Below are positions 40,537 through 43,338 of a DNA stretch of 64,000 bases, piece by piece; within the stretch, counting starts at the first letter, position 1; each line of letters begins with the position of its first letter. The translations under genes and the position numbers were made by a program. The stretch is from the sequence record NC_019410.1; one strand, 5' to 3'. The notes beneath the pieces are model-generated. The model did not search any database. It was not told where the DNA came from and was given only the letters and a program-made list of their open reading frames with translations.

Positions 40537-40625
40537 TGGAGCTTCGGGAGGGACTCGAACCCTCATAGGTGTTCCCACCAGCAGAGATTTGCAATCCCGC
40601 GCCTAACCTCTCAGTCCACCGAAGC
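40537..40625 (-). tRNA. tRNA-Cys(GCA) with a long (class II-like) variable arm
   Basis: Acceptor GCTTCGG/CCGAAGC, U73, encoded CCA, anticodon loop TT-GCA-AA, variable arm GGTG-GGAA-CACC, T arm GAGGG-TTCGAGT-CCCTC. Confidence 0.85.
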
Positions 40626-40845: not shown

Positions 40846-41722
40846 GTTTTCCGATGGGCTGAGACTACACCCATCAGCAATCCCGCTTCGAGGATTATTC
40901 CCCAGGTGCGACCCCAGGTATTCCCTCGACGTCCACCAGACCCCTTGCGGTAGTCCAGTCCGAGATCATCGCCGCCGTTCTTGCGCACCCCGAAGGGATT
41001 GCGGGTCTGGCGTTTGACCCATCATGGCGAACTACTCGACAGTTCCTTCCCCGCTGGGCTTGCGACCCACTCACCGGCGCTAACCGGCTGACGAAGCTCT
41101 TCCTATCGACACCTCGCGGGCTTGCGACCCTTGAGATGACTCCGTTACCCGAAGGCCGGAGCATTTGGCGACTTACGTCCGCCACTGGACCAGTCTTTGC
41201 GTTTTTCATCGAAGCGGGGATTGAACCCGCGACCGACAGCTTAAGAGGCTGTTGCACTACCACTGTGCTATTCGCAAACCCACCAAGACGTGCTGGTCCA
41301 GTTGTTCCCAGAGCTTTTGACCCCGGAAATGCAACACGCCTCATATCTTTCGCCTTGCGGGCTACTCGACTGCTCTTCAGGACTCCGTCTCCCCCAACCT
41401 TTCGGCCAGGATGCCCAGCACCCCTCGAACTGAAGCAAAGCTCTTCACCGCGAAGTGTCGAACCCTGCAACCCAAACGGTTATCCGTACTCCCTAGACAC
41501 GCTTGCACGGGATAGTCCGCTTGCGACGGACTGGCGGTTAAAGCCTCGGAGTTACCCCGGCCCCGCCTTGTCTCCCACGGTCTTCAGGTCTATCCCCTTT
41601 TGCAAGAGGCGGCCAGCTTCCCAGCCCGGACCCGTCGGCTTCCTCTGTCCTCTTGCGAGGTCGGGCGGCCTATGGGAGACCGTCCCTGTCACCCCGTCGC
41701 CGGGGCTTTCGTCAGAAGCGAC
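40846..41722 (-). ncRNA. GOLLD-like giant ornate RNA (~870 nt)
   Basis: Size, tRNA association, an embedded tRNA, GAGUA E-loop motifs, repeated GCAA tetraloops, and 3' motifs GAGCUUCGUCAGC and GGUGUAGUCUCA recalled from GOLLD; has its own promoter and terminator. Ends are approximate. Confidence 0.78.
41206..41277 (-). tRNA. tRNA-Lys(CTT)-like element embedded in the GOLLD-like RNA; acceptor stem broken, no CCA
   Basis: D arm GCAC-AGTGGTA-GTGC, anticodon arm ACAGC-CT CTT AA-GCTGT, T arm GCGGG-TTCAATC-CCCGC; acceptor TTGCGAA/TTCGATG has only 4 Watson-Crick pairs. Confidence 0.8.
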
Positions 41723-41728
41723 GATGAC

Positions 41729-41757
41729 GTTCTAGCGACAGCCCACGTCGTCGTCAA
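41729..41757 (-). promoter_or_regulatory. Caulobacter sigma73-type promoter TTGACG-N15-GCTAGAAC for the GOLLD-like RNA
   Basis: Matches the recalled Caulobacter housekeeping consensus TTGACGS...GCTANAWC. Confidence 0.75.
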
Positions 41758-41813
41758 CGACTTTTTCCGTCTCGATGTCGAATTTTTTCGACAGTCGTGG
41801 ATGACGACAGTGC

Positions 41814-41841
41814 TTGACATTCTCGTAAGCCCATGCTAGGT
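41814..41841 (+). promoter_or_regulatory. Promoter TTGACA-N15-GCTAGG for the tmRNA
   Basis: Divergent from the GOLLD promoter. Confidence 0.65.
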
Positions 41842-41844
41842 GTC

Positions 41845-42225
41845 GGAAATCGTTGTAATTCGGACAACGGAACTGGCGGCAAGACAGGGGTGCGAATCCC
41901 CTCGCCTCCACCATCGACGCCCGGCGCTGGGAGTACGCGACTCCTGGGCAGGGAGTGTTACCCTGGCGGGCTGCGGCCCGAGCCAAAGGTAGCCGGGCGT
42001 CGTTGATGGGGGCGACTAGCTTTCGATTGGCGCTCGGGACTGAAAGACGCAACGGTGGGTGACCTCCACATCGGCTTGCCGGTGATCGGGTCAGGCAACA
42101 GTAAATGTCGCCGACAATGACAACGACGTCGTGGCTTTCGCCTCGGCTCGTGAAGCCATCGCCGCCTAATAAGCGGTAGAGGAGCCCGCCGGGAGCTTGG
42201 CAACAGAATCCCGGCAACCCCCTTT
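41845..42225 (+). ncRNA. ssrA: Circularly permuted (two-piece, alphaproteobacterial-type) tmRNA; tag ADNDNDVVAFASAREAIAA
   Basis: The acceptor piece ends T arm-CGCCTCC-A-CCA at 41913. The coding piece starts GGGGGCG at 42008, giving a G3:U70 Ala identity pair. The tag ORF at 42110-42169 ends in AA followed by TAATAA. Confidence 0.92.
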
Positions 42226-42350
42226 CGCAGGCGGGAACACCAACAGGCGATCTGTCGGGCGACCGATTTCCGATCCGTGTTCCCGTCTTCGAAAGGTGGT
42301 CAGGCCTACCCTCTTGGTGTGCTATCCAAGGGTCTGGCCACTTTACAGAA

Positions 42351-42429
42351 CGCGGGGTAGAGGAGTCCGGTTGTCCTCGTCTGGCTCATAACCAGGAGAT
42401 CGTGGGTTCAAATCCCACTCCCGCTCCCA
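42351..42429 (+). tRNA. tRNA-fMet(CAT)-like
   Basis: CGCGGGG 5' end with a C1:U72 mismatch, CTCATAA loop, TTCAAAT T loop and encoded CCA. Confidence 0.88.
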
Positions 42430-42510
42430 ATGCGAACGCCGGCTGTTGAGAACGACGGCGTGACAAGCTCGGAGAGAACGAGCACTCCAGTCCGGGGTAT
42501 GAGGCCGGAC

Positions 42511-42707
42511 TAGCGGACGCCGTAGCGATTGCAGGCGTGACACCCGGAGATAGCGGGACCGGCTTTCCGAGCCGCATGCTCGGCGCGTAAGACCGCAGGC
42601 CTCGGCCATCGGGCAGTGTCAGGGGATGAGGCTAGTCCTCGGCTAACCACCTAGCGGTGAAGCTAGGGCATGCGGTTCGGAAAGCCGGGTTCGCGGTTCG
42701 TCCGCTA
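42511..42707 (+). ncRNA. Unassigned structured RNA with a 27-bp stem and multibranch loop
   Basis: 42553-79 pairs with 42668-94 (26 of 27 positions, 3 GU); outer helix 42511-19/42699-707. Confidence 0.55.
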
Positions 42708-42708
42708 C

Positions 42709-42790
42709 GAGATGGAGATGTCGCCGGTTCGAGTCCGGCAGGTCCCCCAAAAGGAGGCCTTAGCTCAGTCGGTAGAGCGCTCCTATCCCA
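42709..42790 (+). ncRNA. YrlA-like Y RNA / circularly permuted tRNA mimic
   Basis: The order is stem 5' strand, T arm (TTCGAGT), acceptor-like hairpin closed by CAAAA, D arm (AGTCGGTA), stem 3' strand. Confidence 0.7.
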
Positions 42791-42795
42791 CCTTT

Positions 42796-42880
42796 GGTAC
42801 GGTGGCTCGACAGGTAAGGCATCGGCCTCATAAGCCGAGGGTTCGTCCCAATCCTGGTTCAAATCCAGGTCGTACCTCCA
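42796..42880 (+). tRNA. tRNA with CAT anticodon, long variable arm and U73 (Met/Ile2 identity uncertain)
   Basis: Acceptor GGTACGG/TCGTACC, anticodon arm TCGGC-CTCATAA-GCCGA, variable arm GGG-TTCGT-CCC, encoded CCA. Confidence 0.85.
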
Positions 42881-42954
42881 AATCGACGCTTGACCCCAGG
42901 CCGCAGGCTGCTAAGCTTCCCCGGTCGGGATCGTCCCGCGTCCTTTCCAAGGTC

Positions 42955-42985
42955 AAGCCCCCGGAGCTTCGCTTCGGGGGCTTTT
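42955..42985 (+). terminator. Rho-independent terminator ending the tmRNA/tRNA unit
   Basis: AAGCCCCCGGAG-cttcg-CTTCGGGGGCTTTT. Confidence 0.85.
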
Positions 42986-43338
42986 CAGTTCTTGACCACC
43001 CGCAGGCGCCGGGCCTCGATGGCGCGCTCCTCCGCCGCCACGCGCGAGACGTCTTGCAGGTGCGCCTTGGCGATCAGGTCGGGCGCGCCCACGGCCCGGA
43101 AGGGCACCTTGACGGAGAGGTCGACATAGCGCCGCAAGAGAGGCTCGAATTCCAGACCCCGCGCCTGGGCGATCCGCGACAATGCGCCGGCGACGATCGC
43201 CACGACCAGGACGTTGGTCGGGGTCTCCTTGGTCAGGGTCCAGATGCCCGGTATCGATTGTCCAGGATGGAGTTCCTGCCGCGACACGTCATCGGCGGCG
43301 GCGCGGAAGAGGTTCTCGTAAGGGACGTTTTCGAGCAT
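42985..43338 (-). CDS. Hypothetical protein
   Basis: 117-aa ORF converging on the terminator. Confidence 0.55.
   Translation of the reverse strand: MLENVPYENLFRAAADDVSRQELHPGQSIPGIWTLTKETPTNVLVVAIVAGALSRIAQARGLEFEPLLRRYVDLSVKVPFRAVGAPDLIAKAHLQDVSRVAAEERAIEARRLRVVKN

What the first reader, a model, noticed from the sequence alone, without database searches (positions are those of the whole stretch)
42709..42790. Circularly permuted tRNA mimic (YrlA-type Y RNA architecture)
Seen: the 3' half of a tRNA precedes the 5' half. The order is GAGATGGAG, ATGTC, T arm GCCGG-TTCGAGT-CCGGC, AGGTCCCC/GGAGGCCT closed by a CAAAA loop, TA, D arm GCTC-AGTCGGTA-GAGC, then CTCCTATCCC, which pairs back with the 5' end. 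Established: this topology (acceptor stem closed by a loop, RNA ends at the anticodon-stem position) defines YrlA Y RNAs, which partner Ro60/Rsr and are associated with RtcB. No Ro60/TROVE gene is in this window, and I could not see a canonical bulged-C Ro site. Inference: it is an RNA-damage decoy or scaffold, released by processing of the flanking tRNAs.
Basis: partly seen in the sequence, partly recalled or inferred. Interest (0 to 1): 0.7.

Follow-up and report, generated by a model that had tools for sequence, protein, structure and literature searches.

The report
Orphan permuted tRNA mimic in phage
A Caulobacter phage (Karma, a phiCbK relative) carries a small RNA element folded like a tRNA whose ends are swapped and whose amino-acid end is sealed by a loop, the design of bacterial YrlA Y RNAs. 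The phage has neither the Ro60 partner protein nor the Ro-binding stem, so it offers a tractable case of such a mimic apparently working without Ro.

Summary
Window 42709-42790 (+) reads closing stem, 5-nt variable loop, T arm, 7-8 bp loop-capped acceptor stem, U8-A9, D arm, G26, closing stem. All canonical tRNA tertiary-contact nucleotides are present. A strict descriptor finds this architecture once in the 221,828-bp Karma genome and never in shuffles. Rfam YrlA matches only the tRNA-like module (29.7 bits, gathering score 69).

The YrlA filing is only half right. No Ro60/TROVE gene exists in any Shapirovirus or Poindextervirus. Relatives CcrColossus, CcrPW and Brevundimonas phages have Ro plus separate Y-RNA arrays. 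The Rsr-binding motif and basal stem are absent. RtcB is present (gp180, outside the window) but occurs in all relatives regardless of the module.

The element is a roughly 105-nt insertion. It lies between a conserved, covarying, unannotated ~260-nt RNA ("X", 42430-42692) and a tRNA-Met, inside a tmRNA-tRNA operon. Equivalent permuted modules sit at the same site in Colossus-type and Brevundimonas phages, with compensatory changes in all seven acceptor pairs. It is lost or replaced in other sister phages.

Best reading: a Ro-independent, non-chargeable tRNA-body mimic forming the 3' domain of a processed spacer RNA. Its function is inferred, not shown.

The parts
41821..42260 (+). Permuted (two-piece type) tmRNA gene, the first gene of the RNA operon that contains the element
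   Evidence: ARAGORN permuted tmRNA with tag peptide. Rfam tmRNA_permuted 71.9 bits, gathering score 47.
42351..42429 (+). tRNA-Met(CAU) no. 1, with a C1.U72 mismatch and an encoded CCA. Its 3' maturation would define the 5' end of the spacer RNA.
   Evidence: ARAGORN and Rfam tRNA 48.4 bits. Annotated tRNA-fMet in CcrBL10.
42430..42692 (+). 'X' RNA: a conserved, unannotated structured RNA. It has two small hairpins, a nested stem and a roughly 28-bp long stem capped by a three-way junction. The tRNA-like insertion follows it directly.
   Evidence: Conserved in all Shapirovirus and Poindextervirus genomes examined. RNAalifold predicts 69 pairs, 9 with compensatory changes. No Rfam family at E<=10.
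42693..42705 (+). Small hairpin GCGG-UUCGU-CCGC at the start of the insertion. It occupies the position of the capped hairpin GCGCC-UCCUA-GGGCG in CcrColossus.
   Evidence: Read from the sequence and from the alignment with CcrColossus.
42709..42717 (+). 5' strand of the closing ('anticodon-stem') helix, GAGAUGGAG
   Evidence: Pairs with 42780-42789 in the MFE fold: 4 bp, a bulged U, 3 bp, a mismatch, 1 bp.
42718..42722 (+). Variable loop AUGUC (tRNA positions 44-48)
   Evidence: A44, U45, G46 and C48 fit the 26-44, 10-45, 22-46 and 15-48 contacts.
42723..42739 (+). T arm GCCGG-UUCGAGU-CCGGC
   Evidence: Identical (17 of 17) to the T arm at the same site in CcrColossus and CcrPW.
42740..42760 (+). 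Loop-capped acceptor stem: AGGUCCC(C) / CAAAA / (G)GAGGCCU. It is 7 bp plus a possible G-1:C73 pair, with an A2.C71 mismatch and a G4.U69 pair.
   Evidence: All seven pair positions show compensatory change across lineages.
42761..42779 (+). U8-A9, D arm GCUC-AGUCGGUA-GAGC, and G26
42780..42795 (+). 3' strand of the closing helix (CUCCUAUCCC) plus a 6-nt U-rich leader (ACCUUU) that runs up to the tRNA-Met no. 2 5' end. RNase P cleavage there would create the 3' end of the element.
   Evidence: The RNase P step is an inference from the established 5' maturation of tRNAs.
42796..42880 (+). tRNA-Met(CAU) no. 2, with a long variable arm. Permuted modules in relatives always lie directly upstream of this gene.
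42952..42985 (+). Intrinsic terminator ending the tmRNA-tRNA-X-module-tRNA unit
   Evidence: Terminator scan and the GC-rich hairpin plus U-run read.

Best explanation
The element is a real, structurally selected 'tRNA body' mimic of the YrlA type. It has a T arm, D arm and variable loop with every elbow- and core-forming nucleotide. Its acceptor stem is sealed by a loop, so it has no CCA end and cannot be charged. It has no anticodon loop.

It is not a complete Y RNA, because it lacks both the Ro60-binding stem or motif and a Ro60 gene.

It forms the 3' domain of a roughly 365-nt spacer RNA (X RNA, a small hairpin, then the mimic). This spacer is transcribed with the phage's permuted tmRNA and two tRNA-Met genes and ends at a terminator.

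Inferred steps:
- The spacer RNA is released by 3' maturation of tRNA-Met no. 1 and by RNase P cleavage at tRNA-Met no. 2.
- The L-shaped domain gives the RNA a nuclease-resistant end.
- It displays a tRNA elbow that can engage tRNA-recognising proteins (modification or processing enzymes, or tRNA-targeting host factors) without entering translation.

It is accessory rather than essential, because sister phages have lost or replaced it.
For: Shown:
- The exact architecture and all tertiary-contact nucleotides are present.
- The architecture is unique in the 221,828-bp genome and absent from shuffles and from tandem tRNA junctions.
- Rfam YrlA matches the tRNA-like module only. Bona fide Ro-adjacent phage YrlA-like RNAs score in the same sub-threshold range, 28-52 bits.
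- A tandem-tRNA junction in Vibrio phage VspSw_1 was not called as YrlA.
- Modules with the same order of parts lie directly upstream of the same long-arm tRNA-Met in CcrColossus, CcrPW and four Brevundimonas phages. They have different acceptor and D-stem sequences that still pair. In the acceptor, 7 of 7 positions are compensatory and 46 of 49 cells are paired. In the D stem, 3 of 4 positions are compensatory.
- The T arm is 17 of 17 identical to that of CcrColossus.
- The element sits on the same strand as, and between, tmRNA, tRNAs and a terminator.
- No Ro is found in the whole clade, and the Ro-stem motifs are absent.

From the literature:
- YrlA tRNA-like modules are substrates of TruB and DusA.
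- The stable tRNA fold was proposed to protect the RNA from nucleases (PMC4201824).
- The crystal structure shows true tRNA mimicry with a conserved elbow proposed as a binding site for an unknown factor (bioRxiv 10.1101/312249).
Against: - No transcript ends or abundance could be measured. The only RNA runs holding the locus are assembled contigs, in which 41461-43100 lies inside one 10-18 kb contig.
- Carriers of the Karma-type module have identical sequences (Karma, phiCbK, Ccr10, RBC57). Within-type covariation is therefore nil.
- Homology to the Colossus and Brevundimonas modules rests on synteny, shared architecture and the shared T arm. A covariance model built from Brevundimonas modules alone scores Karma only 10 bits and CcrColossus 11.9 bits, below some tandem-tRNA junctions.
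- My cross-lineage pair count used a parse that required pairing, so it is partly circular.
- The closing helix is 7-8 bp in Karma but only 3-4 bp in relatives.
- Distribution is patchy. The module is absent in Rogue, BL64, BL10, BL57 and RBC63/8/11, and is replaced by an unrelated roughly 145-nt segment in Magneto and Swift. This shows it is dispensable.
- With its 5' flank included, alternative folds compete.
Confidence: 0.6

Rival explanations
1. Evolutionary relic. The element would be a leftover of a tandem isoacceptor tRNA duplication, or of a Ro-linked Y RNA, that lost its outer parts when the Shapirovirus lineage lost the Ro locus. It would be transcribed passively and have no function.
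For: - The phage has no Ro and the element has no Ro-binding motif.
- The Ro/Y-RNA locus that sits between the lysis cassette and the HTH gene in CcrColossus is missing at the syntenic place in Karma.
- Distribution among sister phages is patchy.
- The relaxed descriptor picks up the tRNA-Pro/tRNA-Pro tandem junction, which shows how such a topology can arise.
- Wang et al. discuss an origin of YrlA from dimeric tRNA (10.1101/312249).
Against: - Every tertiary-contact nucleotide is intact.
- The acceptor strands, which would come from two different tRNA copies, still pair and covary across genera.
- Ro-encoding relatives keep this inter-tRNA-Met module in addition to their Ro-linked Y-RNA arrays. 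It is therefore not simply what remains after Ro loss.
Confidence: 0.2
2. RNase P-opened two-piece tRNA-like RNA, as in Mycobacterium smegmatis YrlA. RNase P would cut in the CAAAA loop, the 3' side would be trimmed and receive CCA, and the split molecule would then have a free acceptor end and might even be charged. This would parallel the two-piece tmRNA encoded 0.5 kb upstream.
For: - The acceptor stem has the full 7 bp (plus G-1:C73) stacked on a 5-bp T stem. Chen et al. identify this as the determinant that makes M. smegmatis YrlA an RNase P substrate in vivo (PMC4201824).
- The 3' side of the stem runs straight into C-C-A-A-A-A.
- The same operon already uses permuted acceptor topology for tmRNA.
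Against: - The syntenic modules in relatives cap the stem with 13-22-nt loops that form further helices, and they have no CCA-like sequence. An open acceptor end is therefore not the conserved state.
- There is an A2.C71 mismatch next to the would-be cleavage site.
- There is no anticodon or identity set.
- There is no experimental data.
Confidence: 0.12
3. A true Y RNA that works with a Ro60/Rsr protein supplied by the host, or by a divergent phage protein that went undetected.
For: - There is a YrlA model match.
- Related phages combine Ro with similar tRNA-like units. In Brevundimonas phage Gurke, the Ro/Y-RNA locus lies only about 3-5 kb from the tmRNA-tRNA-Met island, on the same strand.
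Against: - No GNCGAAN0-1G motif or basal stem is present, and the model match stops at the tRNA-like module.
- tblastn at E<=10 finds no Ro in the phage.
- The 80 best bacterial relatives of the CcrColossus Ro (the 80 kept of 142 found) include Asticcacaulis and Hyphomonadaceae but no Caulobacter. This is weak evidence, because the search is pattern-based and capped.
Confidence: 0.05
4. A circularly permuted tRNA gene that matures into a working tRNA by end-joining (for example by the phage RtcB) followed by opening of the acceptor loop, as in Cyanidioschyzon merolae.
For: - The topology is the same as that of permuted pre-tRNAs.
- RtcB is encoded by the phage.
- The 3' strand continues as CUCCU-AUCCCAC, which resembles an anticodon stem strand plus a loop with U33 and a CCC triplet.
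Against: - There is no bulge-helix-bulge motif, and bacteria have no known splicing endonuclease.
- RNase P would leave a 3'-OH end, which is not an RtcB substrate.
- The 5' side has no matching loop half.
- Joining the predicted ends would give an oversized loop.
- Relatives have no such sequence.
- RtcB is not specifically associated with the module.
Confidence: 0.03

Closest known systems
YrlA (Y RNA-like A; Rfam RF02553) of Salmonella Typhimurium, Mycobacterium smegmatis and other species
   Same: The tRNA-like module has the same order of parts: AC-stem strand, variable loop, T arm, closed acceptor stem-loop, D arm, AC-stem strand. It has the same conserved T- and D-loop sequences and tertiary-contact nucleotides. 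The Rfam model aligns over positions 23-85. The 7-bp acceptor stem resembles that of the M. smegmatis form.
   Different: It has no Rsr/Ro60-binding module (no GNCGAAN0-1G, no long basal stem) and no rsr gene nearby or anywhere in the genome. It scores 29.7 bits against a gathering score of 69. The tRNA-like domain is not nested inside a Ro-binding stem. Instead it is appended 3' of a separate 260-nt structured RNA and lies within a tmRNA/tRNA operon.
Ro-linked Y-RNA arrays of related phages (CcrColossus gp139 locus, Brevundimonas phage Gurke, Xanthomonas phage Tabio, Mycobacterium prophage prophiT37-1)
   Same: They come from the same virus subfamily (Dolichocephalovirinae) or from other phages. 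Their units contain the same T arm, capped acceptor and D arm module, and their sub-threshold Rfam YrlA scores are similar (28-52 bits).
   Different: Those units lie directly upstream of a TROVE+vWA Ro60 gene. In CcrColossus they carry a repeated 5' GGGTGGCGTAG..(T/A)CTTCG and 3' GTTCCCCC(T/A)C signature. Karma has neither the gene nor the signature.
Inter-tRNA-Met modules of CcrColossus, CcrPW and Brevundimonas phages (undescribed; found here)
   Same: They occupy the same genomic slot (after tmRNA and tRNA-Met no. 1, directly before the long-arm tRNA-Met no. 2) and show the same permuted order. The T arm is identical in CcrColossus and CcrPW.
   Different: They have an additional upstream T arm and hairpin, long or structured acceptor caps, non-canonical D arms (GAGG/CCUC or GUGU/GCAC), a GGAUAAACGG motif and a short closing helix. 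They are not detected by Rfam YrlA at E<=0.05.
Two-piece (permuted) tmRNA of alphaproteobacteria and of this phage
   Same: It uses the permuted gene order in which the T arm and 3' acceptor strand precede the 5' acceptor strand. It is encoded in the same operon.
   Different: tmRNA is cut into two pieces, ends in CCA, is alanylated, lacks a D stem and carries a tag reading frame. The element here has a full D arm, no CCA and no reading frame.
Circularly permuted tRNA genes (Cyanidioschyzon merolae and some archaea)
   Same: The 3' half precedes the 5' half. The acceptor stem is initially a closed loop. The ends pair as an extended anticodon stem.
   Different: Those genes mature to real tRNAs through a bulge-helix-bulge endonuclease and a circular intermediate. 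No such motif, enzyme or reconstructable anticodon loop is found here.

Membership tests
YrlA / bacterial Y RNA | tRNA-like effector module: T arm, loop-closed acceptor stem and D arm, closed by an anticodon-stem-like helix formed from flanking strands | tested here: met
   Sequence reading and fold. Tertiary nucleotides. Rfam YrlA alignment to model positions 23-85.
YrlA / bacterial Y RNA | Ro60/Rsr-binding module: long basal stem formed by the 5' and 3' ends, with the conserved GNCGAAN0-1G motif on the 5' strand (Chen et al. 2014) | tested here: not met
   The Rfam match is local and omits model positions 1-22 and 86-114. The flanks contain no such motif (read). Only 6 nt separate the element from the next tRNA. 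The CcrColossus Y-RNA signature GGTGGCGTAG is absent from the RNA island.
YrlA / bacterial Y RNA | Encoded next to, or in the same genome as, a Ro60/Rsr (TROVE) gene | tested here: not met
   tblastn of the Tabio Ro against all phage records at E<=10 hits CcrColossus, CcrPW and seven Brevundimonas phages at 57-61% identity. It hits no Shapirovirus or Poindextervirus. No annotated Ro is present in the 409 Karma features.
YrlA / bacterial Y RNA | Reaches the Rfam RF02553 gathering score (69 bits) | tested here: not met
   The score is 29.7 bits. Genuine Ro-adjacent phage YrlA-like RNAs also fail this threshold at 28-52 bits, so the test is weak for phages.
YrlA / bacterial Y RNA | Physical association with Ro60 and an effector such as PNPase; tRNA-type modifications (pseudouridine-55, dihydrouridine) | not testable with these tools
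   Requires immunoprecipitation and modification mapping.
Association with an RtcB RNA-repair system | RtcB encoded in the genome and specifically co-occurring with the RNA | tested here: inconclusive
   RtcB is present (Karma gp180, Pfam PF01139, E 3e-124). It lies about 33 kb away and is found in all 30 phiCbK-like Caulobacter phage records and their Brevundimonas relatives, irrespective of the module.
Ordinary tRNA gene, or a junction of two tandem tRNA genes | Complete cloverleaf(s): the upstream partner must supply a 5' acceptor strand, D arm and anticodon arm, and the downstream partner an anticodon arm, T arm and 3' acceptor strand | tested here: not met
   ARAGORN and Rfam tRNA find no tRNA overlapping 42430-42795. 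The upstream sequence is the X RNA stem. The downstream sequence is 6 nt followed by tRNA-Met. Real tandem junctions (Vibrio phage, Karma tRNA clusters) do not satisfy the descriptor at 6 of 7 pairs.
Circularly permuted tRNA gene (Cyanidioschyzon type) | Bulge-helix-bulge motif at the ends, and a reconstructable 7-nt anticodon loop after joining | tested here: not met
   Read. The 3' strand offers AUCCCAC, but the 5' strand has no matching half. The closing helix has a single bulged U and a mismatch, not a bulge-helix-bulge motif.
Two-piece tmRNA acceptor piece | Encoded CCA after the 3' acceptor strand, a G3.U70 alanine identity pair, no D stem, and a partner coding piece | tested here: not met
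   The sequence after the acceptor strand is CCAAAA, with no N73-CCA register. The G.U pair is at 4-69. A full D arm is present. The phage's real permuted tmRNA is at 41821-42260.

The most novel reading that the evidence does not exclude
The module would represent a Ro-independent class of phage-encoded tRNA-elbow mimics, kept for a long time in one genomic slot (tmRNA, tRNA-Met, [X RNA], mimic, long-arm tRNA-Met) across Caulobacter and Brevundimonas giant siphophages. It would act during infection as a decoy or adaptor for tRNA-recognising factors, for instance by soaking up a host tRNA-targeting defence nuclease, or by steering tRNA-processing or repair enzymes (RNase P, the CCA-adding enzyme, RtcB) toward the phage's own tRNA/tmRNA set. 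In this reading the attached X RNA would be the effector part.
Probability: 0.2. Interest if true: 0.75.

Novelty: new variant of a known kind. Interest (0 to 1): 0.55.

Why it matters
All YrlA-type tRNA mimics described so far were found next to Ro60, and they have been interpreted through Ro60. What the tRNA-like module itself binds is still an open question. The crystal-structure paper proposes an unknown factor that recognises the conserved D and T stems.

A copy that has neither Ro60 nor a Ro-binding stem separates the two halves of the problem. Here that copy lies in phiCbK-type phages, which infect a genetically tractable host (Caulobacter crescentus). Natural 'minus' and 'replaced' alleles exist in sister phages.

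The finding also shows that the phage's tmRNA/tRNA operon carries two further structured RNAs that genome annotations miss. It gives a concrete example of how a permuted tRNA mimic can sit among, and perhaps arise from, tandem tRNA genes.

Tried and rejected
1. RNA-seq end mapping. Four RNA runs hold the locus, but only as assembled contigs. The element lies inside one 10-18 kb contig with uniform depth, so there is no information on transcript ends or abundance.

2. Wider homologues.
- An IMG/VR scan with an invariant X-RNA motif returned only the three known isolates.
- A JGI metagenome scan with the invariant tRNA-Met no. 2 motif returned nothing.
- I left the second allowed metagenome scan unused because I had no better pattern.

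3. Covariance model. A model built from the four Brevundimonas modules (R1) scored Karma at 10 bits and CcrColossus at 11.9 bits, below some tandem tRNA junctions. It therefore gives no sequence-level proof of homology. MAFFT misaligned the modules, so I counted pairs from a register-fixed parse instead. That parse is partly circular.

4. Origin from a phage tRNA. The best match among the 25 tRNAs ARAGORN finds in Karma 1-100,000 (the main tRNA cluster) is only a generic 22-nt D-arm identity to tRNA-Pro(CGG). No recent donor was found.

5. Long-range pairing of the insertion's CGUCCGCUA with the invariant UAGCGGACG of X, seen in the 366-nt MFE fold. A 9-nt complement is expected by chance about once in ten such regions, and the motif is equally invariant in phages without the insertion. 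I did not adopt it.

6. gp120 'nucleotidyltransferase' as a CCA-adding enzyme. It has no Pfam hit and only a generic PHROG name, so this stays unresolved.

7. Host Rsr.

8. Literature. The phiCbK genome paper mentions no tmRNA, tRNA-like RNA, RtcB or TROVE. No paper links phiCbK with GOLLD.
Full report
**Where the window comes from.** The window is Caulobacter virus Karma (NC_019410.1), a phiCbK-like giant siphophage of genus Shapirovirus, subfamily Dolichocephalovirinae. Window coordinate plus 62,000 gives the record coordinate.

**The surrounding RNA island.** The finding lies in an RNA-rich island containing:
- tRNA-Cys (40537-40625, minus strand)
- a GOLLD RNA (40856-41342, minus strand; 171 bits) with an embedded tRNA-Lys
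- a permuted tmRNA (41821-42260, plus strand)
- tRNA-Met no. 1 (42351-42429)
- 366 nt of unannotated sequence
- tRNA-Met no. 2 (42796-42880)
- an intrinsic terminator (about 42952-42985)

**Checking the observation.** Folded alone, 42706-42792 adopts the predicted permuted cloverleaf as its minimum-free-energy structure. The energy z-score is ordinary, as it is for real tRNAs.

In tRNA numbering, the element keeps U8-A14, G15-C48, G18-U55, G19-C56, U54-A58, G26-A44, G10-U45, G22-G46, A9-A23 and G53-C61. This is the full set of contacts that builds the L-shape. The capped acceptor stem is 7 bp with an A2.C71 mismatch and a G4.U69 pair. A further G-1:C73 pair is possible. The loop is CAAAA.

**Is it more than chance?** I wrote a strict descriptor requiring:
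- a 4-bp T stem with a TTCRANN loop
- an acceptor stem of at least 6 of 7 pairs, in fixed register
- U[AG]
- a 4-bp D stem with a GG-containing loop
- G26

Results:
- It hits exactly once in the whole Karma genome (221,828 bp, both strands), at this element.
- It never hits in five shuffles of 352 kb.
- Its other hits in about 350 kb of phage loci are all either YrlA-like units next to Ro60 genes or the syntenic modules described below.
- Relaxing the acceptor to 5 of 7 adds only the junction between two tandem tRNA-Pro genes.

That last hit is an instructive control. It shows both that ordinary tandem junctions fail the test and how such a topology could arise.

**Relation to YrlA.** Rfam's YrlA model (RF02553) matches 42715-42782 at 29.7 bits. 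The E-value is 1.3e-4 in 371 nt and 1e-3 in 2.8 kb, and the gathering score is 69. The match covers only model positions 23-85 of 114, which is the tRNA-like module without the Ro-binding stem.

The weak BLAST neighbours of the element are informative:
- In Xanthomonas phage Tabio and Mycobacterium prophage prophiT37-1, they are YrlA-like RNAs (28-52 bits) immediately upstream of genes with TROVE and Ro60-vWA domains.
- In Vibrio phage VspSw_1, the neighbour is merely the junction of two tRNAs. The YrlA model does not call it.

Bona fide Ro-linked phage Y RNAs thus also fall below Rfam's threshold, and the Karma score is in their range.

**Does the phage have Ro60?** It does not. I ran tblastn with the Tabio Ro against all 50,697 phage records at E<=10. 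It finds Ro in CcrColossus, CcrPW and seven Brevundimonas phages (57-61% identity). It finds nothing in any Shapirovirus or Poindextervirus. None of Karma's 409 annotated features is a Ro.

In CcrColossus the Ro gene (gp139) lies between the lysis cassette and an HTH/dUTPase pair. It is preceded by about six tandem Y-RNA-like units, each framed by 5' GGGTGGCGTAG..(T/A)CTTCG and 3' GTTCCCCC(T/A)C. In Karma the same neighbours are adjacent with no such locus between them, and the signature is absent from the RNA island. The Rsr-recognition motif reported by Chen et al. (GNCGAAN0-1G; PMC4201824) is not in the flanks either.

The 80 best bacterial relatives of the CcrColossus Ro include Asticcacaulis and Hyphomonadaceae but no Caulobacter. 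This is weak evidence against a host Rsr.

**RtcB.** RtcB is encoded by Karma (gp180, PF01139, E 3e-124), about 33 kb away and outside the window. It is present in all 30 phiCbK-like records and in the Brevundimonas relatives whether or not they carry the module. It therefore says nothing specific about the element.

**What surrounds the element.** I aligned the inter-tRNA-Met region of eight phages. The first roughly 260 nt (42430-42692, here called 'X') are conserved throughout Shapirovirus and Poindextervirus. X folds into a well-supported structure of 69 pairs, 9 with compensatory changes, including a roughly 28-bp stem capped by a three-way junction. X matches no Rfam family.

The tRNA-like element is part of a roughly 105-nt insertion between X and tRNA-Met no. 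2. Its distribution is as follows:
- Present and sequence-identical in Karma, phiCbK, Ccr5/32/34, S2L, Ccr2/10/29 and RBC57.
- Absent in Rogue, BL64, BL10, BL57 and RBC63/8/11, where tRNA-Met no. 2 follows X directly.
- Replaced by an unrelated roughly 145-nt structured segment in Magneto and Swift.

Only the 3' side of the element abuts a tRNA. The likely product is X plus mimic, with its 3' end made by RNase P at 42795/42796. This processing step is an inference.

**Deeper relatives.** In CcrColossus and CcrPW (which also have an X homologue) and in Brevundimonas phages Gurke, Bambus, Domovoi and Kabachok, the sequence directly upstream of the same long-arm tRNA-Met parses into the same order of parts. 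That order is T arm, 7-bp capped acceptor, U(A/G), 4-bp D stem with a GG loop, G26 and a short closing strand.
- The CcrColossus and CcrPW T arm is identical to Karma's (17 of 17).
- The acceptor and D stems have entirely different sequences that still pair.
- All seven acceptor positions and three of four D-stem positions show changes on both sides. In the acceptor, 46 of 49 cells are paired.

The two acceptor strands belong to the '3' half' and the '5' half'.

Caveats on this comparison:
- The parse required pairing in a fixed register, so the count is partly circular.
- MAFFT could not align the lineages.
- A covariance model from the Brevundimonas modules alone gives Karma only 10 bits.

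Homology therefore rests on synteny, architecture and the shared T arm, not on sequence statistics. The relatives also differ from Karma. They have an extra upstream T arm and hairpin, long structured acceptor caps, non-canonical D arms and a short closing helix. Rfam YrlA does not detect them at E<=0.05. These Ro-encoding phages keep the inter-tRNA-Met module in addition to their Ro-linked arrays, so the module is not simply debris from Ro loss.

**Expression.** Four RNA-seq runs of a phiCbK-like infection hold the locus, but only as assembled contigs. Positions 41461-43100 lie inside single 10-18 kb contigs of uniform depth, so neither abundance nor ends can be read. The same data show enormous depth over the GOLLD RNA.

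**Mechanism.**

Shown:
- a unique tRNA-body mimic with intact tertiary contacts and a sealed acceptor end
- no anticodon loop
- encoded on the same strand as a tmRNA/tRNA operon, ahead of a terminator
- structurally conserved at this slot across genera
- no Ro60 gene and no Ro-binding module

Inferred:
- It is released as the 3' domain of the X spacer RNA by tRNA-processing enzymes.
- It cannot be charged.
- It acts through its elbow and body, either as a nuclease-resistant cap (the role Chen et al. proposed for the tRNA fold) or as a binding site or decoy for tRNA-recognising proteins. The YrlA crystal-structure paper proposes an unknown factor binding the conserved D and T stems (10.1101/312249).

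I put about 0.6 on 'real, selected, Ro-independent tRNA mimic'. I put much less on any specific partner.

The rivals are:
- a neutral relic (0.2)
- an RNase P-opened, CCA-tailed two-piece form like M. smegmatis YrlA (0.12). The 7-bp stem and the CCAAAA sequence favour it. The structured caps of relatives argue against it.
- a Ro-dependent Y RNA using an undetected Ro (0.05)
- a permuted tRNA gene matured by ligation (0.03)

**Comparison and novelty.** The element works like, and probably descends from the same stock as, the tRNA-like module of YrlA. It fails the defining tests of the family on three counts: the Ro-binding module, linkage to rsr, and the gathering score. I therefore file it as a new variant of a known kind, an orphan Ro-less YrlA-type mimic fused to another structured RNA in a tmRNA/tRNA operon. 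It is not a member of the family.

I found no description of it, of X or of the phage tmRNA in the phiCbK genome paper or elsewhere in the searchable literature.

Interest is moderate. The topology itself is known, including in phages. What is new is a Ro-independent copy in a model phage-host pair, with natural presence, absence and replacement alleles. This makes the open question of what the YrlA tRNA-like domain binds directly testable.

Noticed in passing
window 42430-42692 (+): 'X': an unannotated roughly 260-nt RNA between the two tRNA-Met genes, conserved in all Shapirovirus and Poindextervirus genomes, with a partial homologue in CcrColossus and CcrPW. RNAalifold predicts 69 pairs, 9 of them compensatory. 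It contains two repeated hairpin+GUGACA units and a roughly 28-bp stem capped by a three-way junction that holds an invariant GGGGAUGAGGCUAGUCC hairpin. It has no Rfam match. RBC57 annotates a 41-codon ORF on its opposite strand, probably spuriously.
   Followed up: partly
window 40856-41342 (-): A GOLLD RNA (171 bits) with a tRNA embedded in its variable region. In infected-cell RNA-seq contigs its word depth is about 13,000 to more than 25,000, against about 600-900 for the flanking 10-18 kb contigs. It therefore appears to be one of the most abundant phage RNAs.
   Followed up: partly
window 41205-41278 (-), especially 41242-41246: The tRNA embedded in GOLLD is tRNA-Lys(CUU) in Karma, Magneto and Swift but is annotated tRNA-Gly in phiCbK and Ccr10-type phages. 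The RNA-seq strain shows a compensating 1-nt deletion and insertion plus A>G exactly there. This is an anticodon-loop switch between close relatives.
   Followed up: no
window 41821-42260 (+): The phage encodes a permuted (two-piece type) tmRNA with predicted tag VADNDNDVVAFASAREAIAA. It is not annotated in the GenBank or RefSeq records and is not mentioned in the 2012 genome paper. Homologues occur in CcrColossus and Brevundimonas phage Gurke.
   Followed up: partly
window 42796-42880 (+): tRNA 'Met' no. 2 has a CAU anticodon but a class-II-like build: 85 nt, a long variable arm with a UUCG-capped stem, a Ser/Tyr-like D arm and a U73 discriminator. It is conserved from Karma to the Brevundimonas phages. 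Its amino-acid identity may not be methionine. tRNA-Met no. 1 (42351-42429) has a C1.U72 mismatch like an initiator.
   Followed up: no
L002:962-1109 (CcrMagneto; same in CcrSwift), in place of window 42693-42795: Magneto and Swift carry a different roughly 145-nt insertion at the same slot. It folds well (-59.8 kcal/mol, z -2.2) and has no tRNA-like features. The slot between X and tRNA-Met no. 2 behaves like a cassette site.
   Followed up: partly
L014:1950-2930 (CcrColossus, upstream of Ro gp139): An array of about six tandem Y-RNA-like units, each bounded by GGGTGGCGTAG..(T/A)CTTCG and GTTCCCCC(T/A)C. One unit is annotated as tRNA-Gln. In Brevundimonas phage Gurke, a YrlA-like unit overlaps an annotated 'tRNA-Ser' (L015:5643-5766).
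   Followed up: partly
L015 (Brevundimonas phage Gurke, 152000-160000): In Gurke the Ro/Y-RNA locus is contiguous with the tRNA-Cys, tmRNA, tRNA-Met, module, tRNA-Met island on one strand. This suggests an ancestral RNA quality-control island that Shapiroviruses have partly lost.
   Followed up: no
Karma record 137203-138435 (L020:37203-38435, -), outside the window: An RtcB RNA ligase (PF01139, E 3e-124) is conserved in all phiCbK-like phages. In RBC57 and BL57 the tblastn match is split into three pieces, so the gene may be interrupted or frameshifted there.
   Followed up: no
window 42748-42759: The capped acceptor loop and 5' strand read AAAAGGAGG, a perfect Shine-Dalgarno-like string. No start codon follows within range, so this is probably incidental.
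   Followed up: no
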